A stretch of DNA of 64,000 bases, taken from assembly GCA_051294905.1 (NCBI GenBank), contig CM119383.1:10044001-10108000 (forward strand), in the 5' to 3' direction. Origin of the DNA: Botryllus schlosseri. Its lineage: Eukaryota. A program made the translations under genes and the position numbers. This document shows positions 15,119 to 61,500 of the stretch, piece by piece (the first letter of the stretch is position 1; every line of letters starts with the position of its first letter). Below the pieces are notes generated by a model, which was given only the letters and a program-made list of their open reading frames with translations, had not been told where the DNA came from and did not search any database.

Positions 15119-15287
15119 CAGTGGTTCCCAACGTGGGCGATATCGCCCCCCAGGGGGCGATTTGGCGATCTAGGGGGGCGAAAATGACGAAGGGGGCGAC
15201 AGGGGGGCGAAAATGGACAAAGGGGGCGACGGGGGGCGAAAATAGCGAAGGGGGCGATAGGGGGGCGATGACGCGTAAAACGGCTGA

Positions 15288-15318
<31 letters not shown>

Positions 15319-15516
15319 GTCATCCACCTAGCAATGCGGAGCGAAAAAACGTTATTTTCAGCTCTGAGCGGAGAAAGATGACCTTTTTTTTTTTGAGTCA
15401 ACCCGCCGGTGATTACAGTCTGTATGCCCAATTATCGGTGCACAAAATTTGGGGGGCGATGATCGGTGTTGACCTTGAAAAGGGGGCGATGGGTCGAAAA
15501 AGGTTGGGAACCACTG
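15119..15516. mobile_element. Young hAT (Buster/Charlie-type) MITE
   Basis: TIRs CAGTGGTTCCCAAC and GTTGGGAACCACTG; perfect 8-bp TSD ATCTAATG; subterminal GGGGGCGA repeats; internal poly-T module. Confidence 0.92.
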
Positions 15517-16178
15517 ATCTAATGGAATCATGACGATTAATACTCAAATCACAGAGTTCACTCCTCTCAATGAGCATGAGCAGTGAGCACAGATTACACA
15601 CCTGTTAAGTCAAGTCTGTTAAGGAGTCGATCGGGATTAACTGTAACTGTAGCAGTCCACGGATACCTACTAAACACAGCACAGCACATAGAGGACTTGT
15701 GGCACCCTTAGGGCCCGAATTTTTCATGTAATACGCATCGTCTGCTAATCTAAACAAGGAGAGCCACACAGCGAAAGAATGACAGCAAAGTTATCATGCC
15801 GTACGTTAGTAACTGGGGAGGCTTCGAAACAAAAGCAAAATCGATAATAACCTCAACAAAACGCTTAAAAGTTCCGCAAATCGCCGGGAATTCAATATCA
15901 CCAAGCCAGCTGAAAAAGAACACTAGTCTCCAAACGCTGACGATGAAAAAAAAGAAGTAAATATACTCTTCATGATCACGAAACTTGCTATATATATGTT
16001 GAATTTGTTTCATGCGACGGGATTTTCGCGACACAGGCAATCCGACGAATACAATTATTACCTATCGCGACGAGGCCCGTCAATCATTTTCAGGCGCGGC
16101 CGTGCCTATCGCCGGGGCACCCGACGTGAAATCGAACTCAAGAAACACACGCCAGACTGGGGGGGGGGGCTTTGCTGT

Positions 16179-19100
16179 TCATTGTTCCGTGGAACCGCTG
16201 ACTAAAACTGGGAAACTGGACACGGGACAGGCGGTGGGCGACCGAACCAAGTCGGACATGTTGGACGCCCCGGCGGTAAACTGTGGCGCCGAGCGGGCCC
16301 CCAGGTCTTTTTTCAAATCCGAGGGGCGCTGCGTTTTTTCTCCATTGTCGTTACGCCTCGTGGGTGTATTTTCACCGAAACCACCTCTGCCCGAAATCGC
16401 GCCTGCTCCGGTCGCCTGGACGCTGTCGATTCCATCGTGGGCCGGCGGATCGGATTTTGAAATGTCCGTATCGGCTGTGACACGCTGTCCTTTCTTTGAG
16501 ACGGGCTTTGCCGTCGGCGGACACGTGGGATTCCGGCAGTCGACCGGCATGGCGCGGGCCCGGGCCGCCGACGGCAGTGGCGCGTGGGGCTGCGTGTCGT
16601 CCTGCCCCGTTGATTCGTTTTCGACACGCAGGGTGTGGATCAGCTCGCGTACGAATAGAGACTGTTCCGCGATTTCCGTTTGTTGCGCATCGTCGCTTTC
16701 GCCGACGTCACTCCGATATATCCTGGAACAATATTATAGAAGATATCAGTGAAATGAATTCTTTTATAATTAATATAAAAATATATAAATATATGCTCTA
16801 CCCAAGGGGTTCCCAACATACGAGTCTCGACTCCAATGAGGCCGTTTGCCTTTTCTCTAGCGTGGCGGGGATGAAAATTAAATACCAATGACTACTACAA
16901 GAATGGATGGTATCGACAGCTCATTTCTGAAAATTTTACTTCAATTTACAACATAGAAAAGACCTCTGAAGAATGTGAACGGAGCGAACAAGTAATCAGA
17001 TCAGTTGAAGCGTCATTCTAAAGCGCCACCTACTATGCCTTAAGGTTGGTGTGTGGACAGTGGATACCACTAGGACGATTAAGGTGCTGCGTACATAGAA
17101 ATTAACAGGACAGGAATTTCTCCTTCCAGGAAAACTACAAGTGACCGGTAGTGCTATGTGCTTGGGGTGTATTTAATTTGTCAATGTCGCCAGCACTACT
17201 CGATTGGATATAGATCGAAATCGTTTCAAAAGACCTTTATACGTTGCTATAGTATTGACAGACAGAGGTCGGCCAGTTCATTACTGCTTATAAAATTTGC
17301 TATTACTACGCACACAGTCACCGTCATCGGCTTCCACAATCCACATACGCCGTGTGTGGGCGAAGATGCTGACCATTTTTCTAGTAATCAGCACACCAAA
17401 TTAAGAGTGGGGTTGCGGAATATTTTCAAATCGAAATTTGGGGTCACGACCATAAAAAGGTTGGAACCCCTGCTCTGCCCACCCCAGTGGTTTGGATAAC
17501 TTTCACTTCCGCTGGAACAGGAACTTGGTAAGGCAAAACTGCTTACCTCTCTGAATCTCTGTATATTACGTATAGCCTAATACTGTTCTGTACTATCGTG
17601 ACCTTAAACTTAGACACGACTCTCAAGTCATTTTCTAAAAATCGAAAATTACTCAACTTGACACGAGTGCATTTGTGTGTCGACTCGACTTGTACTCGAG
17701 TCATTATATATTACTTGACTCAAGTCTCGTGTATCAGGACCGATACATAGAAAAATAGGCGCAGAAACCTGTTTGAATAAACAGTTGAGAGTGAGAAAAA
17801 TGAGTATGCCTATATTATGAATGCGAGGTCTTCGATATCACCCCAAGAGTTGAACCTGTCTTGAATTCAATAATGAACAGTGAACTCTTATGACTTGAAC
17901 AGGAAGATAGATACCCTTTTCACCAAGTTCATATCATAAAGGTTTGTGATGATGTAATATGATGAAAGTTCAATCATTCTCTCTACTAATCAAAATTATG
18001 CTAGCTTGAGAAAAAAATCACCTCATAGGTCCGCCAAACCAGATTCTGTTGTGTAAAGCAGCAATGTAACAAATTGGCATTGCAAACTTGGTAAAACCAA
18101 CCGACATTTTAATGGCGGTCTAAAAATCAATTATTTTCTTGTAACGTTTTTTCTGTACATTTTTTAGACCAAGTTCTATGGTAGTGAGATAGAAACATGT
18201 TGCTTCCGCAGCTTTTAAGCCCAAAACTAGCTTTCTAGCATAAGCGGTTATCAAGACATGGCAAAATTAGCTATTTTCAGCTCGTTCGGTGAAATTGCAC
18301 GGCCACTAGAGGGTGCAGGAAGATGAAATGATGATAGAAGTAATTCATTCGAGATTTCGGACCACATATCAAATTCGTTGCCCCACATCAAATCAATTCA
18401 GAAGGCCGTGCCATACCTCCGACGAAACTTTCTCTAAGCGAATTACACAGTGGACCGAAAAATATCGCGCAATTCCAACTCAAAACCATCGGCACTCACT
18501 GTGACAATAACAATCTCGGGTCCTCATCTTCCGTTACAGCTGTCGAAGCGTCTTTATCAGTTCCTTTCGCCGCCGTCGCGTAACTCTTGCTTTGATTATT
18601 CATCGATTGAAGGCCGTTCTGTTTCGCGCTCTGGCCGGCCTGGATTTTCGCCGGGATACGATCGAGCTGAAATAGGACATCGGTGAATGCCAGATTGGCG
18701 GTAGCAAAAGACGTGGCAACCTCGTCCTCCGTTGTCTCGTCTGAAGAACCGCTAACAACATCCCAACCGTCGTCATCATCAGACATTATTCTATAGGTCA
18801 TCAACATACCAAGGACGTATCGGCGTGGGATATAACCGCAGGTTTAACTGAATGGCGAATGACAGCGAAAAAAGGACCCGTCAAAAAGTGCGCCCTATCC
18901 GAGCATTCATACGTAACTGCAGACATAGCAGAATGGTAAATACTTAGATAAAGCTCAGACGCGTTATAATGCATTGTACATATATGTAAACAATTTCAGA
19001 CAAAAAACTGTAGACATCGGGATAAACTCTCATTTCGAAAAAGACTACGCGGTACTCCACCCTTGTTACATGTTTGGGTTAGGGCTTCAGCCAGTGGTCG

Positions 19101-22100
19101 GACTCAGCTGGTTCTATAGAGCCGTCAAGAAGCTTTATGAGATCAGTGAATTAATAATACTGGTTACTGTCAACGAATTTTTGTAGCAGAACTGGCTGAA
19201 AAATATGGCAGAATTGTGATAGTAACGACTGAAAAAATTCTGAATCTGACCACTGGTTCAGGCTCTACGATTCAATAAGAACATGCCAATGTGTTGCCTG
19301 AAATAACTTCATTCCTGCCACTCAAATGAACAGTCAGTCAAACGATAAAAACGGCACTTTTAAATGTGTGACTTAAACTGTAAACCAGTCGATCAGTCAT
19401 TCAGTCGATAAACAACCAATTTTGGTGTTCAAATGAGCCGTTACTCAGTTGATATAGGCTGCATATACAAGTTGATTTACAGACGGCAGGAATACACAGA
19501 TCTCCAAGTAACGGATATATTTAATCACATCCTAATCCTGAGATTTGCAGTGGGTAGTGTGCCATAAATTGAACAAGTAATCTCCAGGCAATTTGTAACC
19601 TGTATGTAGGACTGCGCTACCGTAGTACTTTATCCATGCGTGATAGGGATTGCCTAAAACCAACTTCCAAAGGCAGAAAAAATTATTAACTGCAAAAAGT
19701 AGATACATTATCCACACTTCCTCAACAGGACAGGTAAATGTGACATGGTGCTAGGTCAGTGGTTCCCAACCTTTTTCCGCCCACGTACCATTCCGAGGTT
19801 TTATGCAGTGCTCGCGTACCACCTAAATATGAATTACACGCGCCAAAGACAGTAAAAAATGTCTCCACCTTGTTGAGCTCCTGAAGGCAGCGAAACAGAA
19901 AATAAACTAGTACATGATTTCTGTGGTGGATCCATTTGGAATTCTTGTGGTCAAATATGTTAAAACCGAATTTGGTTAGGTAAGAATCCCAATGCGTCAC
20001 GACTGGATCTCTTCCCCGTAGGCCTTCATTGGTGGGATTGCCCCTACCGACGACGACGACCTTACCACGATGACTATGGCTTTGAAAAACTCAAAATCAA
20101 GCCCACCTGAACTAATAACTCCCTTCGGTCAAAAAAAGACGGAATCAACTTGTGTACCACCTGGAAGACCTTCGCGTACCACTAGTGGTACGCGTACCAC
20201 AGATTGGGAACCACTGTGCTAGGTGATAGAACTTCTCACGAACGACTTGAATTTGGATAATTAGAATTATATTTCACCATTTCTCCACTTAAGACTCTGG
20301 AAACAAGACTGAATGCCCACTTCAAAATCAAAACAAGTTACAAGTTTGTAACGTCAGAAATAGGCCACCCCATAACGTCCACATTCAGTCTCGGCAGACA
20401 TTCGAACAAACATACTTTCATACATTCATCAGGCAGAACACTCAAATGACTCAATACCCAGTTAACACGAGTATGTGCCAAACAACGTTGAAATTATCCA
20501 GAATGGTGGGAGCACCTACCCCAGGTTTTGAGTTGACAATAATAAAGAAATCATTATCACGACTACAAGCTCGACAATGTGTTGGAAACCCACATGCTGC
20601 ATACAATAATTCCAGTTTATATTCGCATACCAACAAGTCGAGGCGATTTAATTTGATATGAATGCAGCTGATTAAAGAATTACAGCTGGCAAACATACAA
20701 AAAACATGTCTTTGAACAAGGCCTATGTCACCATGATTAGTGACGCCCAAGTGCCCTGCCTGCTCAGAATTCAACCGCACTCAACTGTGTCATCTTCTGT
20801 CTTAATTTTCCGAGGTCCTTGCAAAGCTACCATGTTCTGCAATTCAATTGTGAAAGGCAGCGGTACGGGTGGGGGAAGCGGTATGACATCCTGATCCGGC
20901 CCGTTAAAAGAAGTGCCGTAGTGACGAGTGGATTCATTATTGGTTGGTCGGCGGCCTTTCACCTGTGATCTGCGGAACCTGCGCGTTACTTGAATATCTT
21001 CGGCCATATGGCATCCCATATCCTATCTTGTCAGATAATGTATGTCTATGATATTCGGCGGATAACCGACTAAACAATTATGTCATTGGGCCTAGCTCAC
21101 GTCAGCAGACCAACAATGTGATTAGCAGAGGCTTACCCTATGCAATCTATTGCATTTACAGATTACAATAAATGATAGAATTTAAACTATTATAGAACTT
21201 ACAACATTTGAAACATATAACCTTGAAGTTAATTCCATACTGACAGTTCACCTGCAACAACAAAGACTCACCTTCTAGTACTCCCGACATTACTTTGCCC
21301 ATTCGAGTTGGGATTTCTAGCAAGGCTCCTAGAGAAAGTTCTCTTCCTAGATGACATAACCTACCCTTCCTAGAAACTAACTGCAAATTCCTCACCAACT
21401 ATATATCTGCCCCAGTTCTGAAATGCCTCACCTCAATCTTGCTATGAAAGTTGACTGATATCCTGAATCATGCATTATGACATCATAATCACAGCCATTG
21501 CCAAGAAAATCTGAGGAGCATCATACTATGCAGCTACCGCACTCGCACGTGCTGTTCTGACCAATCGAGTGAGGTAACAGATGGGGAAATAGGATTTCAT
21601 TGATTAGCACTGATTATGAAGCAGACAACATCAATAGTTTTGAAGAGGATAGAGCACAATTGTAATGGAAACATTCAATACTAAATTGGCTATTAACGCA
21701 GTCTACTGATTTGGCGGTTGAACAGTTGATACTGATGACCACATACTTCGATTAGACGTACATTGGGAAGCAACACAGCCAACAAGATCATGACCACAAA
21801 AGAACACAGTACATATAGATGTCAAACAAGAATGAAGCAGCCAGAGAATTTAATCCCCGAAAATGTTATTCCTGATTTCTGACCGACCATCACCACAGCA
21901 ACCATGACAATGGCTACAGCAAGAAAATACGAGACATCATGGTCTAAGACACGGGTCACCAACCTTTTTGAAGTCAAGAGCTACATCTTGGGTAATGATT
22001 AAAGCGAAGGGCTACTAATTTGAAGGGGCAATGGGTCCTTCTCCCTGGTCCTATCGGCGATGCGAAAAATCCAAGTCTGATTTTTGCAGAGGGGTATCAA

Positions 22101-48700: not shown

Positions 48701-51700
48701 AAACAAAGAACTTCTTTTTGCATTGCTCAAGTGCGTTTTGCCTACTTGCACCGTTTATTCAAGTGGTGATGATTCCAGACTACTTTTACTTGAGCAAAAC
48801 TAGGCCTAAACACTTACTTTTTACCTACTCAGAAATCACTAATTCTACTTGTAGTCGAGCAGAAATTTATGTTATTTCTACTTGACCAGCTGGCGCCGAC
48901 GAGGTTTTCCGAAAAATTTTGCTTCAATTTTCAAAACTGTAAAACACCACCTCAATGGGATGCGAAACCAGCAAGTAATATATCGTTGGATTGGATTCAT
49001 AATTTCAACGCATAACCAACTACGCCACGAAGCTAGACGAGAGCAGGGCAACCGAGCGTGTATATAATCAAGAAGACGAGATAACCTTGTTGTAAAAATG
49101 TACATGCTTTGGTTGCTTCCTTATCGAGTCCACAACGTATACCTAGTGCGAATAAGTACATGCTATTCCTGGCGACAGAGTTATCTTCTTTCAAACAAGC
49201 CACGAGTGACAGCTTTTGCTCAACTAATTCAATCGATAATATCAATACATGGTAGAACGTTTCACCATAAATACACAGAGGGAAAACCTGAAATTCTGAA
49301 TCCAATGATATATTACTTGTTGGTTTCGCATCCCATTTAGGTTGTGTTTTACAGTTTTGAAAACTTTATCGCATACTATATCACACGATACAGTGATCAC
49401 CAGCGAACTTGGCACTTGGAGAATTTGGTTTAAGAAATCTATTAAAGATTTCATGATTATTATATTACTATTCTCGGAAGGGAAAGTTTTACGTGCCGTG
49501 GTAGACCACATAGTGTGATAGCCTGATATCGAACTCTCCACCAAGTACGCACCCGGATCAAACTTTACGTGATTTGAGGATGTGTGCAAAGTTATGAGGA
49601 GTACGTTACGTCAAGACTGCATAATATCCTCTCAACTGACTAGCTCCAATACGATGCCGGCAAATCGTTACAACCACACACCCCATTTAGAATTACAGGT
49701 CATGCATATCAATATGTACGTCAATACATAATAGTTACCGATAGTCTCGGAAATTTCCGCATGAACACCCGAGAGTCATCCTCGTCCGAGAATTCCGTCT
49801 GACGAACGATTGGCGATCTCTCGCATTGCACGCCTGGCAACGATTACCGTCGAATTTCAATCGAAAGCAATCAAACCCGGCCAGACTTACTTTCCGCTTT
49901 CATTCCCGCCTGAAGACATTTCTGCAGTCGGCAGTACTGGCACCTGTTCCGGTGCGCCTTTGATATTGTGCAGCTGCGCGTGCCGCGGCAATTGTATTGT
50001 AGATTTTTTCGTATGCTCCTCTTGAAGAAGCCTTTGCATCCTTCGCAGCTTTTCGCGCCGTAGTGCCTGCCTGGATAGGGAGAGCGCGATGTCGGTCACA
50101 CTTGAAAGGGGAGATTAGCACAAACTTGGCCAGATTTGGATTTACTATTTCTGGATTTGCTTTGGACATGAAATTTGGACTTCAGAAGTCCAAATTTCAG
50201 CCATTATCAAATGTGGACTAGGGTGCGAGACAAAATTGATTCTAGATATGGATCTCAAATACTAAAGTCATGGAAGTTGAAGTAGATGTTATAAACAGGC
50301 CATTATCGTATGACTGACTCGATAATTTTTTTGGTGACTACAAGGACTTGAGTTTTCTAATTCAAATTCATTGAATGAAGCCAAATGAACGTTGGAAAAT
50401 AACATAAATCAAGTTAATGACTCACTTCAAAAGTATAAAACATCTCGTCTCGATTTAAAAACAGATCACAAATTTGTTCTCCACACAGTATGACTCGTGA
50501 TCACTGGAAAAACGCATTACCTGATGCTTTGTCCCCGCACACGACGCAGACATCTTTGCCTCCCGACGGGCTCTCTGATTTTTGTGCGTCGTGACCGTCT
50601 TGTAACCAAGTTGGCGCGCGGAATAGGTTCTGAGGCTCCACGGAAATTTGTATCGTGCTCTGGTCGCCTCCGACTTGAGACCCGGCAAGGGAGCCAGTTG
50701 ATATCTGAATTTGAGATAGCTGGTCAACGGGTCCAGTAGTCACTAACACTTGTGGATTAAATCCACTTCAACAGATTTTGAAGTGAAAGAAAAATACTTA
50801 CAGCAGATGATTTTGTCCAACAGAAATTTAATCGAAGAGCTTCTTAGAGGCACAGAACTTCAATATAATATTGAATATTATAGGCTATACATATTGAAAT
50901 GAGCCAGAATATTTTTGGCTGAAACTCGTCAGGGGTAGTCGCCAGCAACTATTAGAGAATTGGAAAGAACATTGTATATCAACAATTGTATCACAAAATA
51001 TGACGTTACCTACTCACCAGCATGAAATTTTGAATAGGAGAGCGCTCAATGTACAATTTTTAGAATATACTATTCAATTATACATAGAAATTCAATCGAA
51101 AATTCATTTACACTATTTCTAGTAGTGATCCCGGCCAACTGTTACATAATCGCGAAATATAGTTCAGAAATTGCACTTGTTTGTGGCAGCATTGGTCAAG
51201 AAATCATGTGCTGATAACAAAGCACACTAAAGACGAATAAAATCCCTCACTATGTTTCACTGCTTCACACTTCCTCAACGGGCTACTTTTGATTATTCTC
51301 AAACACAGAAGCACAGCAAGACATAGTTCTTCCCAGGTAATTGGGACAAGGACTAATAGCCTACTACTCAAATAGATAGTTAGAGTTCTAATCCGCCAAC
51401 AAACAACTGTGACCAATACACTTGAGTAACTTGTAAGTACATACATGATTCCACCGCTTTATAACAAAGTTGCAAAGGTACTTTGACAAGAAATGTCGAA
51501 AGTATAAACAATTACCGCAACAGCAGTGCGATCACAGTCACACAAGCCAAGCAGTACAGACCTGGATGAGACCCTTGCTCTGGAGTTCCAGCAGTTTTCC
51601 AGGAGTTAACTGCTCTATCGTAAGAACATTGTTTTGATGAGGATTACCAGACGCTGAAAACGGAAGGAAAACAGATTTTTTTTGTCAATCACCGGGATAA

Positions 51701-54700
51701 ATTATATAAAACAACCCACATGGCTCTGTCACAAAAGCCTGTCCCGTCGAATGATCAGACTGGATCACATACAAGCCCTGGTCATTCCGTGATCCATCCT
51801 GGGTGAGGGCAAACAGAACCATTAGTTTTTCTCCACAAATTCATCACAAATATCAAACGCATCATTTCGTTAATAACCTATTGAAGTACTAGCATAGTGT
51901 TTTTCGTTATATTTCATAATAAATATCCAATTGAGGATCTACAAAAATATTCCAACACTAGGAGAAAGCAATGTACCACAGACACTAGACTGACTAGAGC
52001 ACGAGACTACTTTTTCAGCATGTAAGGCACTTAAGAATGAGCAAGTTTAAATGATGTATCTTCACAATTAGCAACGGTAGGTAACTTTTTTTATGCAATT
52101 ACACAATTTCATGCTGATGACTTTAACTAGGTCCTAGTGTGACGGCCAACCATATGCACACTTCTATATGTTCATAAATGTCGTGAAACAGTACCTAATG
52201 AGACGGATGAAAGGTCAATGGTGCCTGATCAACCAATAGTGCCTTTACAATCAACTGTCAGAATGTGCTCGAAATATTGAGCACTAGTCCTCATTATAAT
52301 TATAATCCATAGTGATCCGTAATTGCCGAGTAGTAATGATGAATAAGCTACACAGAATTATTAATTGCGAGCTTCAGCTGTGCTGGGATTGACCGTGCCA
52401 GATTTGCATGCACAAAATGATCACATTATTTCACAAATTTTATAGCAGTACCATATCCCTATCTTTTTTCAATTGTGAACCATCCTCGTCTTCATGATCT
52501 TCAATGTCTTGTTCAACCACAACCGTTTCTTCTGTCAGATTAAATGAACAGAGTCGTAATTTTTGAAACAAAACGCCGTTACCAAAATTTACATCACACC
52601 TGCCGTACCGACGTATCCTTGACTAGTGCTATGATCTGATTGGATCACGTAGAGGTTTTGATCGTTGCGCGTACACTAGAATTATAGAATACATGATAAC
52701 AATTCACCCTTACAAGAAGCGATGGGAAGGATCCGGGATCTGAATCGAATCTCAGAAATTCAAAAAATTAATTCAAAAACATTCTGTATGGTGGAAGTGG
52801 TGTTGAGACAATTTCTAGATAATTAACATTGCAACGATTATTCACGTTTTGTCAAGATGCGGATTTGCCCCACCACTAGTCTCTGGCATTTTTATGATCC
52901 CTGTTGTGAATCATAGAGCAATCACCTCTGGTCAAAGACTAGGTGTGATACAAACATATACTTTCAAAAATAAGTTGATGCAGGTTGGACCAGCAGTCCA
53001 CAACATAGACAAGCCCGCTAGGTGGACGCAACGCAATTTTGGAGGGGCCGCACCACAGGTTCGCTTGGATCTCGTTAAGTTTTCCGCTTGTATTATCAAA
53101 AAGACAGTAGCAATTTCTTTTTAAAATACAGTTTCCAATATTCCTTTTTGAGTTGCATACATTTGTTGTGATTTCATTTTGGGGTAATTGTGATTTTATG
53201 AAGTTCACAGGTTCACAAAATTTGCTTTGACATTTTGACAGTCCTATAAAGCTGCAAAGATTGAGAGCCACAGTGATACACTCTCATTACAATGTGATGA
53301 GTGCCCAGGGTGGAATTGGTGGAAACGTCACGCAAAACTTTCTGATTAGGGTCTGGTCTACTTTCCTACCCACAAAGTCAGAGATCGTAAAGTGTTCACC
53401 ATGATCACCAATGAATGTTTTCCATGACCACGAACAAAAATTTATAAATGTCAATATATATTGTTTTTGCGTTTGGAGAGGGTTAGGGTCAAAGTTGGGT
53501 TTAGGGTATCCCAAGATTAGGGTTGGAGTATTAGGGTGGGAGGGGGGATATTAGGGTTGTGGGAGGGGGGATATTAGGGTTGGGGTTAGGGGGATATTAG
53601 GGTTGAGGGAGAGGGGATATTAGGGTTGTGGGAGGGGGTATTAGGGCTGAGGGATATTAAAGTTACGGGTGAGGATATTGGGTTGGGGTTAGGGGGATAT
53701 TAGGGTTGCGGGAGGGGATATTAGGGTTGCGGGAGGGGAGATAGTAGGGTTGCGGGAGGGGGGATATTAGGGTTGCGGGACCTCCCGCAACCCTAATATC
53801 CCCTTTCCGCAACCCTAATATCTCCCCTCCCGCAACCCTAATATCCCCTCCCGCAACCCTAATATCCCCCCTCCCGCAACCCTAATATCCCCCCTCCCGC
53901 AACCCTAATATCCCCTTTCCGCAACCCTAATATCTCCCCTCCCGCAACCCTAATATCCCCTCCCGCAACCCTAATATCCCCCCTCCCGCAACCCTAATAT
54001 CCCCTCTCCCGCAACCCTAATATCCCCCCTCCCGCAACCCTACTATCTCCCCTCCCGCAACCCTAATATCCCCTTTCCGCAACCCTAATATCTCCCCTCC
54101 CGCAACCCTAATATCCCCTCCCGCAACCCTAATATCCCCCCTCCCGCAACCCTAATATCCCCCCTCCCGCAACCCTACTATCCCCCCTCCCGCAACCCTA
54201 ATATCCCCCCTCCCGCAACCCTAATATCCCCCCTCCCGCGACCCTAATATCCCCCCTCCCGCAACCCTAATATCCCCTTCCCGCAACCCTAATATCCCCA
54301 CTCCCGCAACCCTAATATCCCCCCTCCCGCAACCCTAATATCCTCCTTCCCTAATCTTTGGATACCTAACCCCAACTTTGACCCTAACCCACTTCCAATC
54401 TCCCTTTCCATCCACCCCAACCCTAATATCCGTCTCTCTAAAGGCACAAGAAAAAAACAATTTATTTTGGCGTTTATAAATTTTTGTTCGTGTTCATGGT
54501 AAACATTTCTTGGTGTCCGTGGGGAACACTTTTCTTCGTGGGTAGGAAAGTGGACCAGACCCTCTGATTAATTACTTAATTATTCTATCCAGAAAAGCTC
54601 TCATCACACAGGATTTATTTTAAAAAATGAGCCTAGATTCCATAGGGGATGACTGCGAATATAGATAGCTGAAACAGGGTGATTTAGCGTAAGCTTAAGA

Positions 54701-55053: not shown

Positions 55054-56753
55054 GCATTTCAGACTTGTCAAAGAAATCTCTACACAAAATATTCACAACA
55101 AGAAGATATATAATATATATAGTTAGGCTACCGTATTGATTTACTGTAATAGTGTGGTATTCGTCTATTCGACGGGTATAGCCGATACGTATAATGTAGA
55201 GTATATATCTCACAAACGTCTAGATTACGAGGATATTTTTCACACAGTTATGCTCCCATATTACTTGTAGTTTCTTCCCTTCGTACCTTACTATATACCA
55301 GTGTCATCATAACACCTAACACGTATTGTATAAGACGAAACGAAACCAATATAGCCAATGCGAGCATAACTTCTGCGTACATGGTACCATAACTTTGATC
55401 TTCGCATCCCTTACTACGACACCAATATGCAAGTCAAAAACAGACTGCACTGCTGCAAACATTGATGAATAGTTAACAAACAACTACACAACATACAACA
55501 CTAATTTGTAAGTTTCCCCCCGCAAATTAAAAACAAAGTTAAGTCACGGTTCAGGCGACTGCGTGGTCAAAGAGCAAAGTTTATGTTTAGTGACCCGATA
55601 GCAGATCTCACGGGCAAATTTGCGCATGCGCGGAACTCACGGATATTCGTTACGTTACAAATAAACCACTAGCGGGTCGTACGCATTGTTGTGTAGAGTT
55701 ACTGGGGTCGTACCGCGAGGTAATTTACAGCAATTTACGCTGTAAATGGGTGTGGTGGTACTATATACACTATATATTAATCGCTTCTGTCTCCTGACTT
55801 CTACACGAGACGACATAGATTACTGTCGCTTGCGTCTTATATTCTCTGCATTACTTTTCATTCAGTGTGCAGGTGTGCACTGTGCATGCCTCTTCTTCAC
55901 TTCGCCTAGGCCAAGGTGCGTATCTGATCTTAAAGACCACTCCAAGTTGTTTCGACAATTTCCTATCTTTTCATTGTATCGCAGTTTTGTGGTGTTTTGA
56001 AACGGCGAAAATATTAATAAAACTGATTGATTGATTGTCTTCAACTTACATCTTCTGTTGCCATCGGCTACTGAGCACTGACTTGCTCCAAATTTTATAT
56101 AGCCTAGTCTATTTGCTGCTAGCCGTTACCTAGCATTATTATTATTCATTTCTGATAATATGCATTTTACAACCAATTCATGTTGAGAGAGGTGTATCTG
56201 TTTCCTGTAGGTGTGATCACAGTATAATCGGCGGTTTTGTAACTTTTATCCACTCAAGAGACACAAAGTATAGCCTACAATCCGATACACAAGACACATC
56301 CACCTCGGCCTAACGCCCGGTGTAACCGTGCTCGATGGCAGTAGGCTATTTCTTTTAGGACGCTATTCCTTGCTCTTTCGATTCGCTTTTCTTGTATTCG
56401 TCCTTCGTTGAGTCTTATTTCCCTGCACTTTGGATGCAAAGTCGCCGTAAGAACAGCGATGTAGGGTAGAGGACCCAAGATAAACCTTCGACACATATAA
56501 CCTCGAATGTCATTTTGTATCGACCATTCGTAATTCATAAGCGATAGGCTACCGAAATGATATAGCATTGTCTGCGTTTTTTGCAGTTTTATTGTTGCTG
56601 TTTTTTGGTATGCATTTCGATTTGATGTGAAAAAAAGTCTCTCCAGTACTTTCATTTTATGTCCACTCGCGCATCATCTTTTAAGATCCGAATACGAGGA
56701 CACTTTTCGTAAGTTGCAAAAGAGACATGGAAATCGGGACTTTATCCAGATAC

Positions 56754-57718
56754 CAGTGTTGGGATCAAGTCACTACCTTCGAGTCACGAGTCATTTCGAG
56801 TCATTGCAGATTTTGACTCGAGTCAAGTCAATCGATTTTCGAAGGTGACTCGAGTCAAGTCAAGTCACTCGATTTTTCGAGGTGACTCGAGTCAAGTCGA
56901 GTCAAGTCAAGTCAAGTCACGAGTCAAGTCACAATTCAAGTCATGTTGCCTTTTCCAAGTATGAGGCATTCTTACATCATTGCATTTTGCTGGCTGTCTG
57001 AAACACAGACTGAGTGGTCATTGATTCTGGACCTATGAACGAATATAGAGTTAAATATAAACTCAAGAAGGCGGTTTATCGCTCACATATATACGTATAA
57101 ATGCTAAACTACGTGAGTAATTGCATAGCCTCGGATTATAGTTACCAGCTTAAATAGAGAATAGAGAAACAAATTGATAAGATGCGATACATTACCCAGT
57201 ACCGATTTACAAACTGACATGATACAATTCTAGCCTGCGCCAATGGTTTGAGGACTATATAAACTATATTGGAATTCAATTTCAATAAAACAAGAGGTTT
57301 GGTCAAGATAAGAACAGAGAACAGAAATTCACATTTTGCTATTAGATTACTGTACTACACTAGTTTACGACAGCGATGACTTCATTTGCGGTCAATTAAT
57401 TTGTGAGATAACAATGGAGGCTCAGTAAAAACGCACGATCATTGAATGATTGGTCGTTCTCATGGGTTACACCAGCGTTTCGCGTACAATCCGAACATAT
57501 GCAAGACACAATGATTTTTATCGACATCGATTGCTTGATGACTCGAAATTGACTCGTAAATTTTGCTCCGAGTCACGAGTCAATCCACATTTTTGATACG
57601 CCGAGTCAAGTCAAGTCAAGTCATTTTAGCAAAGTGACTCGAGTCAAGTCAAGTCATACGAAAAAGGTGACTCGAGTCTGACTCGAGTCAAGTCATGACT
57701 CGAGTCATCCCAACACTG
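56754..57718. mobile_element. Young hAT MITE with GACTCGAGTC and (AAGTC)n subterminal repeats
   Basis: TIRs CAGTGTTGGGAT and ATCCCAACACTG; perfect TSD CCAGATAC. Confidence 0.92.
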
Positions 57719-58520: not shown

Positions 58521-61500
58521 ATGTCGGATCAAAGAAAAGAGAGACACAGTCAAACGGTCGCTGAAATGGAAGAAGTTGATGGAATTACTACAAGCTCTTC
58601 CCGGCGACCATTTTTGATAGAGAATATTTTGACTCAAACCCACAAAGAAAACCAAGATTGTGGAAAAGTAACAAATGAAGATCAACGCGTTGAAGGATCA
58701 TTGAAATCTGGAGAAATGGCAACTGTTGGAAAACATACTTTACAATCTGATGCCGAAAATTTTCAGAATATTGTTCCTCCTTCCATTTATGACTATCTAC
58801 CGTTTACCGGGCTGCTGACGCCTACCCCTGATGCCGTTGCGGCTTGGACATCATGCGTAAAGGCGATTAATTCTGGCATTGCCCCATACGGAAGAAGGGA
58901 GCACCAATCATTCTTACTACCTCAACAAAATATGGTTCAGAGTACGGCACCTTGTATACAAAATACTTCCTTATCGGCATTCAGAGGCTTGAATACAATA
59001 CGCTCATCCATGGGATATCCAACACACATCAATGTCTCTGCGCCTGGATACCCGGCAGAACAAAGTCAAATCAATCGAATTTCGTACGGATACCCGGCAT
59101 TCGCGATTCCACAGAATAGTGGTGTAGCAAGGAATATTGCAAGTAAGGATATACTATTTCTTCAGTTCATTGCGGGTTCGAATTATTGCAATCAAGAAAA
59201 AGAAAGTCCTATCTATGAATTAGTAAGCTTGCAGCGCAATCACTAACAGAGTACCACAACCCGGGCCTCGCTCATAACACATAAACATAAATAACACATA
59301 TTGAGATAAATCATAACAGCAACTGCAATAAATACAATGTGGCCACGACAGCTGGTGATCTGAGATTCAGAGAAACAGTCATGCTAAACTACAACAATAA
59401 CATATTCTATGCGCGTTACCCACGATAATACTAAATATTGGGTGGCATCAGAGGTGGCTTTTGGGGTGGGCGAGGTGGGCGATCGCCCCCTCCCCTCTTT
59501 GGTCAATCATCAAATATCTGCATTTGTTAGAAAAGTCCCATATACCGATAATCATCAAGTCTCTGCATGTGGTAGAGGTACTTAGTTTTGATGCAGTCTA
59601 TCCTTGCAACCATGCAATAATAGATACGGCCCAATCCAGCGCCTGGCTCAAATCTTGACGTGGTGCGCTGGCTCATTACTAATGTCAGCCGATAGCTTCC
59701 TAGATTAGTGTGGGTCTATTTAGCCTGCAGCATTTGTATCGCTATTCTATTATTTCACGCTACATGCCATACATCTTCAACTTGAAGGCATGAGCTATTT
59801 AATTAACTGGTTCACTTCTTTTATATTTCGACAATGTATGATAAAAGAAGACTCGGGAGCTAGAGCAATTCAACATTCCGGCCTGCCTCAAAGCCCTGTT
59901 ATATAGGCTTACCATACGTCCTCTTTTAAGAGGATTTGTCCTCTTTTTTGACTTTTTTGAAAGTGTCCTCGGAGGACGCCCTTTTGTCCTCTTTTTTAGG
60001 ATTTAGAGCAGATTTAGAGCAAATTGCGAGTGATATGCCACATATTAGCACAGACGTGAAGCTCCGACGGGTGAAAAACGGTGATTTTAGCTCTGAGCGA
60101 AAAGATGACCTTTTTTTTCTTTTTTCTTTTTTTCTTTTTTTTTTTTAGTCATCCATCTGGCGATGTAGGGAGAAAAACGGTATTTTGAGTTCTGAGCGGA
60201 AGAGATGACCTTTTTTTTTTTTTTTTTTTTCTTTAGTTAACCAGTCACAAAGTGGGAAAAATTAACCGGTGTTTGAGAATTCTACTCCGATTTTGAAAGT
60301 TGGAAATTTATGAAAAAGTGTCCTCTTTTTAGATTTCCAAAATATGGTAAGCCTACTGTTATACTGTCATATACACATCACGTAATCCCGTTTCATATGG
60401 CACACTAATATTAAGTTGATAATTCTAAATTCGGTATACACAGATAGCATATTAAAACAAACTTCATCTATTCAAATCTGAAAATCAGAGATAACTGTGG
60501 TTGTCTAGGTCTTATCCGATGCACAATAATAATTTCAAGTCAGCACTACATAGGCACTGGGCAGATACTTTCCATAAATTTCCTCAAGACGGCCTTGTGG
60601 AATAGACGGGACCATGCAGGATCGGGAATTTACCACTGGTGAAATGTAGGCTCTATTCTTCAGGCCTCTCATTATCGCGACAACATACTGGACGCGGTTT
60701 CGGTAAAACGCTGATATGGTCTTATATATAAGATTGACGATATTATATCAAAATATCGATGTTGTGTTATCTTAAAACACCCAATTCTCAGCTATCATCA
60801 TTCAATTGTCAAGAGCCATGTGAGAATGGCCATATGAGATCCCATATCCTACCTTGCAGAATAAATTTAATTGTCAAATTGCCAATAGCTTACTAACAAA
60901 AACATATGTTTAGAGAGGTTTTGTGGGGGTTTGTGAAAGAAAGTTTTTTTTTTCTAATGTATCCCCAAAACAGAATTGGAACCTCGTCGCGGAATCCATT
61001 TTTCCTGTGATATACATAATCACTTTTCCAGAATAACTTCAAGATGAGCTGCATGACTAGTCTAGCTGTGATATGATGATTAAAAATTATGTTTCTAAAT
61101 TTTGGCGTCACATGATGCCATCATACCAAAACTTGTCATCGGAAGCGTCACGCGTTTAACTTACATTTTCCGCCATACTTATCTTTGTGGAAATGGATTT
61201 TCAAGACACGGCCACGTATTTCAAGAAATGCCCCCGCAGAAGTCGATCTGAAATAATAAAAGTCTACCCAATTTCTACATATAGTATGATGGTATTTTGA
61301 AGAAAGTTCATTTTGTTGCTGTTCTCCACTATAGCCCATTGTTGATATCATCTGTGTAAGAGAGATGACGGTTGTAAGATAATTGAGCAAAATTTCAGCT
61401 AAAACTTGAGGGGTCCATGGGAGTCCGTGACTGTCCAAAAGGAGTCCGCGAAGACAAAAAGGTTACGAACCCCTGATCTAGAACTTACTATATAGGCCTG

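What the first reader, a model, noticed from the sequence alone, without database searches (positions are those of the whole stretch)
53349..54562. Merlin-like palindromic transposon built from telomere-motif, G-quadruplex-prone arrays
Seen: GG termini, a perfect 8-bp TSD, no internal spacer or ORF, and arms made of a 22-23 bp unit with one TTAGGG and three to four G-tracts, in NR2C intron 2. Established: Merlin/IS1016 elements have GG ends, 8-9 bp TSDs and often tandem repeats in their TIRs; TTAGGG is the usual animal telomere repeat; head-to-head telomeric arrays normally signal chromosome fusion. Inference: here the TSD shows that a mobile element, not a fusion, placed the inverted telomere-like array. 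The family could seed interstitial telomere-like sites, recruit telomere-binding proteins, and form G4, i-motif, cruciform or long dsRNA structures.
Basis: partly seen in the sequence, partly recalled or inferred. Interest (0 to 1): 0.7.

Follow-up and report, generated by a model that had tools for sequence, protein, structure and literature searches.

The report
Foldback jumping gene with telomere-like repeats
This is a real 1.2-kb jumping gene with no enzyme gene of its own, whose two inverted arms are built from a 23-base repeat that holds one telomere-type motif; such repeat-armed "foldback" elements are a known kind, and its assignment to the Merlin group fits but could not be proved here.

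Summary
Window 53349-54562 is one 1,214-bp unit. It is flanked by a perfect 8-bp duplication (TCTGATTA) and has GGG termini that match at 24 of 25 bases. Its outer inverted repeats are about 120 bp long and 79% identical. A G-rich array and a C-rich array of a 21-23-bp unit meet head to head across a 2-nt loop. No ORF lying wholly inside the element exceeds 52 aa.

It is not a true palindrome, because the arms are 432 and 782 bp. It contains no tandem TTAGGG hexamers, only one TTAGGG per unit.

The flanking duplication and the inverted ends show transposon insertion, not chromosome fusion.

The Merlin hallmarks are met: GG ends, an 8-bp duplication and long inverted repeats that carry tandem repeats. 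Mutator-type foldback elements (duplications of 8-11 bp) also fit these marks, and earlier scan notes report both kinds in this genome. No second copy or enzyme-bearing partner could be fetched. My estimate is Merlin about 0.45 and Mutator about 0.3.

The element holds 31 of the window's 32 TRF1-type half-sites and 22 of its 23 G-quadruplex motifs. Any binding or structure is untested.

The scan has already noted this family on other DNA of the same genome (s1-274176 and several first-stage notes). Verdict: a tidy new member of a known kind, of modest interest.

The parts
53341..53348 (.). Left copy of the 8-bp target-site duplication, TCTGATTA
   Evidence: Identical to 54563-54570 and cannot be extended on either side
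53349..53468 (+). Left outer terminal inverted repeat (unique sequence, starts GGG)
   Evidence: blastn against the reverse complement of 54453-54562: 79% over 120 columns, E 1e-26. The first 25 nt match 24/25
53469..53535 (+). Left subterminal zone with irregularly spaced TTAGGG motifs (degenerate units)
   Evidence: Units L0-L3. Left 53480-53537 matches right 54332-54390 at 88% in inverted orientation
53536..53780 (+). Left G-rich array of 21-23-bp units (about 11 copies). The outer units are older and carry CpG-to-TpG variants
   Evidence: TRF period 23, 80-84% matches; unit list; 6 CG against 18 TG; 7 G4 motifs
53781..53782 (.). Centre of symmetry: a 2-nt CC loop with no spacer domain
   Evidence: Pairing from the centre outward at offset 2 gives 21 perfect pairs
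53783..54351 (-). Right C-rich array (G-rich on the minus strand), about 25 units, with a 158-bp higher-order repeat x3.6
   Evidence: TRF period 23, 25.3 copies, 91% matches; period 158, 94% matches. 15 G4 motifs on the minus strand. A 68-nt exact inverted match joins 54007-54074 to 53713-53780
54352..54452 (-). Right subterminal zone with degenerate TTAGGG-motif units. It includes about 60 bp with no counterpart in the left arm
   Evidence: Units R0-R2; alignment
54453..54562 (-). Right outer terminal inverted repeat (ends ...CCC)
   Evidence: See the left inverted repeat
54563..54570 (.). Right copy of the 8-bp target-site duplication, TCTGATTA

Best explanation
A non-autonomous cut-and-paste DNA transposon of foldback build was inserted as one unit within or just upstream of a minus-strand NR2C-like nuclear-receptor gene.

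**Shown here**
- Matching GGG-initiated ends, an ~120-bp outer inverted repeat, a perfect 8-bp target duplication and no coding capacity.
- Arms filled by inverted arrays of a 23-bp unit, whose conserved core is ATATTAGGGTT.

**Inferred**
- A transposase made elsewhere in the genome binds the conserved terminal ~25 bp, and probably the TTAGGGT-type motifs that recur at irregular spacing in both subterminal zones. It cuts the element out and pastes it into a target opened by an 8-bp staggered cut.
- The arrays are amplified subterminal units. They grow and homogenise by unequal exchange and by conversion between the arms.
- The family is most likely a Merlin derivative (about 0.45), otherwise a Mutator-type foldback (about 0.3).
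- The likeness to telomeres is one hexamer per unit. It need not reflect any telomere function.

The confidence given (0.85) is for 'real non-autonomous foldback-type DNA transposon'. It is not for Merlin membership.
For: - **Insertion signature:** duplication and ends. The flanks are unique in the window, so this is not part of a larger repeat.
- **Non-coding:** no ORF over 52 aa inside the element and no Rfam match.
- **Foldback:** as single-stranded DNA it folds end to end into one hairpin, -387 kcal/mol.
- **Array dynamics:** the right array's higher-order repeat copies are 93-95% alike. A 68-nt exact match joins the inner left arm to an internal part of the right arm. The older outer left units carry TG where the right array has CG.
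- **Core conservation:** positions ATA+TTAGGGTT match at 0.92 or better in both arrays, while positions 9-16 fall to 0.42-0.75 in the left array.
- **Motif outside the arrays:** TTAGGG also recurs 4 and 3 times in the two non-array subterminal zones, always pointing inward.
- **Merlin fit:** GG ends, 8-9-bp duplications, inverted repeats of 24-462 bp and tandem repeats in several Repbase Merlins. Merlin1m_CI has a 155-bp inverted repeat with a 21-bp repeat. MERLIN2_CB has inverted repeats built of 17-bp repeats (PMC8101967).
- **Not hAT:** four hAT-type elements in the same window have 8-bp duplications but CAG/TAG ends.
- **Earlier notes (unchecked):** they report Merlin transposases and further telomere-like foldback copies in this genome.
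Against: - Only one copy was seen, so the duplication length rests on a single case.
- No enzyme-bearing partner was found, and no empty site or read support could be obtained (closed; blank).
- GG(G) ends, long repeat-filled inverted arms and an 8-bp duplication also fit Mutator. Earlier notes report intact NOF/Rehavkus-type foldback elements in this genome.
- Binding of a transposase to the TTAGGGT motifs is pure inference.
Confidence: 0.85

Rival explanations
1. The element is a non-autonomous member of the Mutator superfamily (a foldback, NOF/Rehavkus or other MULE lineage) and is mobilised by a MULE-type transposase, not by Merlin.
For: - Most foldback elements are assigned to Mutator. 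The non-coding foldback Tetris has 8-9-bp duplications in its complete copies and 9-10 bp in rearranged ones (PMC4079207).
- MULE duplications span 8-11 bp, and Spectre gives 8 bp. Rehavkus has inverted repeats of 26-400 bp plus a minisatellite (PMC6446971).
- Earlier notes (unchecked) report intact NOF/Rehavkus foldback elements, and a 4-kb non-autonomous foldback with a 9-bp duplication, in this genome.
Against: - The one duplication seen is 8 bp, the low end for Mutator. The foldback elements noted in this genome have 9 bp.
- The GG terminus is the stated constant of Merlin.
- No link to any MULE transposase was shown.
Confidence: 0.3
2. The element belongs to another superfamily that gives about 8-bp duplications: hAT, P, Zisupton or Novosib.
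For: hAT and P give ~8-bp duplications (PMC3706591). hAT-type elements with 8-bp duplications are frequent in this window. P-type foldback elements are noted in this genome.
Against: - Ends are GGG, not the CAG/TAG seen in all four hAT-type elements of the window.
- The ~120-bp outer inverted repeats are much longer than the hAT norm (my own knowledge).
- The P foldback noted in this genome has a 7-bp duplication.
- Zisupton and Novosib ends were not checked.
Confidence: 0.1
3. It is not a mobile element. It is a relic of a telomere-telomere fusion or an interstitial telomeric insertion, or an inverted-duplication artefact of assembly.
For: The G-rich strands point 5' to 3' towards the centre from both sides, the orientation of a head-to-head fusion. 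Long palindromes are prone to assembly error, and read support could not be checked.
Against: - A perfect 8-bp duplication sits exactly outside matching inverted ends.
- There are no tandem TTAGGG hexamers.
- The outer 120 bp is unique non-telomeric sequence.
- The arms differ in length and sequence (79% outer identity, 432 against 782 bp). That is not what a technical inverted duplication produces.
- Earlier notes list similar elements at other places.
Confidence: 0.03

Closest known systems
Non-autonomous Merlin elements with repeat-bearing inverted ends (Repbase Merlin1m_CI of Ciona intestinalis; MERLIN2_CB of Caenorhabditis briggsae), as tabulated in PMC8101967 S1 Table
   Same: GG terminus, 8-bp duplication, inverted repeats over 100 bp, tandem repeats of about 17-21 bp inside or forming the inverted repeats, and no transposase.
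   Different: Here the arrays are far longer (about 36 units) and meet head to head with no middle domain. The unit carries a TTAGGGTT core.
Foldback transposons (Drosophila FB; Tetris of D. virilis; sea-urchin TU elements)
   Same: Long inverted arms with an outer unique domain and inner tandem repeats, arrays of variable length, no coding capacity in most copies, and duplications of 8-10 bp (Tetris: PMC4079207). The 8-bp duplication of TU elements is from my memory and was not checked.
   Different: Those are assigned to Mutator or left unassigned. Tetris has a middle domain and 220-bp repeats. None is reported with a telomere-type motif in the unit.
Interstitial telomeric sequences and head-to-head telomere fusion sites
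   Same: Inverted G-rich and C-rich blocks containing TTAGGG, with G strands pointing at the junction.
   Different: No canonical hexamer tandems. A 23-bp unit, unique inverted ends and a target-site duplication are present.

Membership tests
Merlin superfamily | Inverted ends begin with 5'-GG | tested here: met
   Both ends begin GGGTCTGGTC; criterion from PMC8101967
Merlin superfamily | 8- or 9-bp target-site duplication | tested here: met
   Perfect 8 bp, TCTGATTA, one copy only
Merlin superfamily | Terminal inverted repeats within 24-462 bp | tested here: met
   Outer inverted repeat ~120 bp at 79%. Inverted similarity continues through the arrays
Merlin superfamily | Ends shared with an autonomous element encoding a DDE_Tnp_IS1595 transposase | not testable with these tools
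   No other copy or partner could be fetched. Merlin transposases in this genome are known to me only from unchecked earlier notes
Merlin superfamily | Uniform duplication length across many copies | not testable with these tools
   Single copy in the window; no access to the rest of the genome
Mutator / foldback (MULE, NOF, Rehavkus) | Long inverted ends, often with tandem repeats or a minisatellite | tested here: met
   criterion from PMC6446971 and PMC4079207
Mutator / foldback (MULE, NOF, Rehavkus) | Target-site duplication of 8-11 bp, typically 9-10 | tested here: inconclusive
   8 bp is inside the published range but at its low end; one copy only
Mutator / foldback (MULE, NOF, Rehavkus) | Ends shared with an element encoding a MULE-type DDE transposase | not testable with these tools
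   As for Merlin
hAT superfamily | 8-bp duplication with short inverted ends starting CAG/TAG | tested here: not met
   Duplication length fits but the ends are GGG. Four hAT-type elements in the same window show CAG/TAG. The terminal rule itself is from my own knowledge
Telomere fusion / interstitial telomeric sequence | Tandem canonical TTAGGG hexamers without transposon ends or target duplication | tested here: not met
   No TTAGGGTTAGGG in the window; inverted ends and duplication are present

The most novel reading that the evidence does not exclude
The family is a mobile carrier of double-strand telomere-protein binding sites. Each copy delivers about 30 YTAGGGTTR half-sites in two inverted blocks. 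TRF-type Myb proteins, or a Myb-bearing transposase, bind them. The element either uses a telomere protein for its own transposition or seeds interstitial telomere-like chromatin, fragile G4/hairpin sites and intronic dsRNA wherever it lands.
Probability: 0.08. Interest if true: 0.7.

Novelty: new member of a known kind. Interest (0 to 1): 0.3.

Why it matters
Repeat-armed non-coding transposons are a known route by which minisatellites and satellite seeds are spread.

This family adds a case in which the spread unit carries a full TRF1-type half-site and strong G4 and hairpin potential. It sits in or next to a nuclear-receptor gene.

If many copies exist, they would explain dispersed telomere-probe signals and interstitial 'telomere-like' hits in this genome without any chromosome fusion. 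Repeat annotation and karyotype inference should take that into account.

A firm link to Merlin would also give that little-studied superfamily a clear foldback derivative.

Tried and rejected
- **Exact-pattern scans:** All were blank.
- **Reaching other copies through ORFs:** the word protein search with the 75-aa ORF that covers the left inverted repeat found nothing. Exact look-ups of two ORFs inside the element found no record.
- **Reaching the same locus in other assemblies (for an empty site):** exact look-ups of flanking ORFs at 56278-56655 and 58521-59243 found no record. The word search with the 241-aa ORF found no hit.
- **Literature:** a full-text search for the terminal and unit strings gave only unrelated primer or barcode hits. 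Feschotte's 2004 Merlin paper is not held.
- **Earlier findings:** the search by sequence was blank.
- **Rejected readings:** hAT (wrong ends); telomere fusion (duplication, inverted ends, no hexamer tandems); assembly inverted duplication (arms differ).
- I did not type the Ciona Merlin transposase printed in a paper's supplement into a script, so the window was not searched for Merlin transposase remnants with it.

Full report
**What is there**

Window 53349-54562 (1,214 bp) is bounded by TCTGATTA at 53341-53348 and again at 54563-54570. The bases beyond differ on both sides, so the duplication is exactly 8 bp.

Both ends read GGGTCTGGTC[T/C]ACTTTCCTACCCAC, matching at 24 of 25 bases. With up to three mismatches this string occurs only at these two places in 64 kb, against 0 expected from shuffles.

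The outer ~120 bp of the two ends align in inverted orientation at 79% with indels (E 1e-26). Inside them lies a short zone where TTAGGG recurs at irregular 14-39-bp spacing. Left 53480-53537 matches right 54332-54390 at 88%.

Then come the arrays. The G-rich run at 53536-53780 and the C-rich run at 53781-54351 both have period 23. The right run has 25.3 copies at 91% matches and a 158-bp higher-order repeat x3.6. The arrays meet across a 2-nt CC loop followed by 21 perfect pairs.

No ORF wholly inside exceeds 52 aa, and no Rfam family matches. The flanks are unique within the window.

- The arms are 432 and 782 bp, so the element is a foldback rather than a perfect palindrome.
- The outer inverted repeats are ordinary unique sequence, not telomere-like.
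- There is one TTAGGG per unit, 14 on the plus strand and 26 on the minus strand. No two are ever in tandem.
- The unit (consensus TTAGGGTTGCGGGAGGGGGGATA) has three G-runs, or four if the G6 run is split.

**Array history**

- The right array is young or recently homogenised. Its higher-order repeat copies are 93-95% alike, and all units keep the CpG (26 CG, 0 TG).
- The outer left units are older, with 6 CG against 18 TG and several GTGGG or GAGGG variants.
- The innermost 68 nt of the left arm (53713-53780) is an exact inverted copy of 54007-54074, which lies inside the right array and not next to the centre. I infer exchange between the arms from this.
- Across units, the core ATA+TTAGGGTT matches at 0.92 or better in both arrays. 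Positions 9-16 drop to 0.42-0.75 in the left array. With about 12 older units this is suggestive only.

**Structure potential**

- As single-stranded DNA the element folds end to end into one hairpin, -387 kcal/mol (no shuffle control is given at this length).
- It holds 7 canonical G4 motifs on the plus strand and 15 on the minus strand. Only one other occurs in the remaining 62.8 kb.
- It holds 31 of the window's 32 matches to YTAGGGTTR. TRF1 dimers need two copies of this half-site, in any spacing or orientation (PMC3241663).
- All of this is sequence potential. Nothing about binding or folding in the cell was tested.

**Gene context**

- A zf-C4 exon at 49901-50071 on the minus strand (Pfam E 2.4e-25) has NR2C2/TR4 as its best solved relative (E 3.6e-26, against 3e-23 for RXR).
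- The preceding exon ends [10 protein letters not shown] at 50519-50548.
- The element therefore lies about 2.6 kb upstream of that exon in gene sense, inside an upstream intron or the 5' region. 'Intron 2' could not be verified without transcripts.
- If the element is transcribed with the gene, the RNA would carry the G-rich array first and then its C-rich complement (inference).

**What it is**

A perfect duplication placed exactly outside matching inverted ends, with no coding capacity, is the signature of a non-autonomous cut-and-paste transposon inserted as one unit. That rules out a telomere fusion relic. The unequal, diverged arms argue against a technical inverted duplication.

The build is an outer unique domain, inner tandem repeats and no middle domain. 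This is the foldback build known from Drosophila FB and Tetris and from other organisms (PMC4079207).

**Which superfamily**

The published Merlin hallmarks are all met: 5'-GG ends, 8-9-bp duplications and inverted repeats of 24-462 bp. Repbase Merlins with repeat-bearing inverted ends exist. Merlin1m_CI has a 155-bp inverted repeat with a 21-bp repeat, and MERLIN2_CB has inverted repeats made of 17-bp repeats.

These marks are not exclusive:
- MULE duplications span 8-11 bp and include 8-bp cases.
- Rehavkus has inverted repeats of up to 400 bp plus a minisatellite (PMC6446971).
- Most foldback elements are placed in Mutator.

hAT is unlikely. Four hAT-type elements in this same window (15119-15516, 19757-20216, 56754-57718, 59904-60355) have 8-bp duplications but CAG/TAG ends.

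With one copy and no partner, I put Merlin at about 0.45, Mutator at about 0.3 and other superfamilies at about 0.1. That it is a real non-autonomous transposon I put at about 0.85-0.9.

**Earlier notes of this scan (unchecked leads)**

- The same genome carries several telomere-like foldback elements of 0.8-2.5 kb at other places (s1-236846, s1-278775, s1-278783, s1-258762, s1-286637, s1-234311, s1-278726).
- One was followed up. s1-274176 is 1.16 kb with about 30 copies of a 23-bp repeat, and was judged a real, recently inserted, non-coding element of a known kind. The scan has therefore found this family before on other DNA, and my reading agrees.
- Notes also report Merlin/IS1595 transposases, intact NOF/Rehavkus Mutator foldback elements with 9-bp duplications, and P-type foldback elements with 7-bp duplications. 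One agent guessed a sea squirt genome. These notes raised my weight on the Mutator rival.
- I could not read those sequences and so did not test them.

**How it most likely works**

*Shown:* the insertion footprint and the anatomy.

*Inferred:*
- A transposase supplied in trans recognises the conserved terminal ~25 bp.
- The inward-pointing TTAGGGT-type motifs, present both in the non-array subterminal zones and in every unit, are candidate subterminal binding sites.
- Amplifying them would raise the element's draw on the enzyme.
- The arrays then change length by unequal exchange.
- The telomere likeness may be coincidental.

**Limits**

- All scans of public collections and all ORF-based look-ups were blank.
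- I found no paper that describes these ends or this unit. The library does not hold Repbase or most subscription journals.

Noticed in passing
window 15119-15516, 19757-20216, 56754-57718, 59904-60355: Four short elements with perfect 8-bp target duplications and CAG/TAG-initiated inverted ends. Two share CAGTGGTTCCCAAC. They look like hAT-type miniature elements, and three of them also carry internal tandem repeats (29-bp unit at 15172-15268; 37- and 33-bp units at 56821-56905 and 57609-57678).
   Followed up: partly
window 49901-50071 and 50519-50780, minus strand: Two exons of a nuclear-receptor gene. The zf-C4 exon's best solved relative is NR2C2/TR4, and the upstream exon ends with the first zinc-finger half, [10 protein letters not shown]. 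The start-codon exon was not located.
   Followed up: partly
window 53346-53351: The left junction itself spells TTAGGG: TTA from the duplicated target plus the GGG terminus. The right junction does not mirror it, and the uninterrupted target has no such motif, so this looks like chance.
   Followed up: yes
window 58521-59246, plus strand: A 241-aa ATG ORF with an eh1-like FLIENIL motif, which might be a first exon of a homeobox-type repressor gene. It has no Pfam match and no relative in the word search.
   Followed up: partly
window 53389-53440 and 54480-54530: Each outer inverted repeat holds two copies of a loose CCAYGRNCAC-like motif (for example CACCATGATCACC and TCCATGACCACG on the left). 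These are possible further protein-binding sites, seen by eye only.
   Followed up: no
window 16012-16891: A cluster of overlapping G+C-rich ORFs (up to 246 aa) on both strands with no Pfam match. This may be a CpG-island-like stretch rather than a gene.
   Followed up: partly
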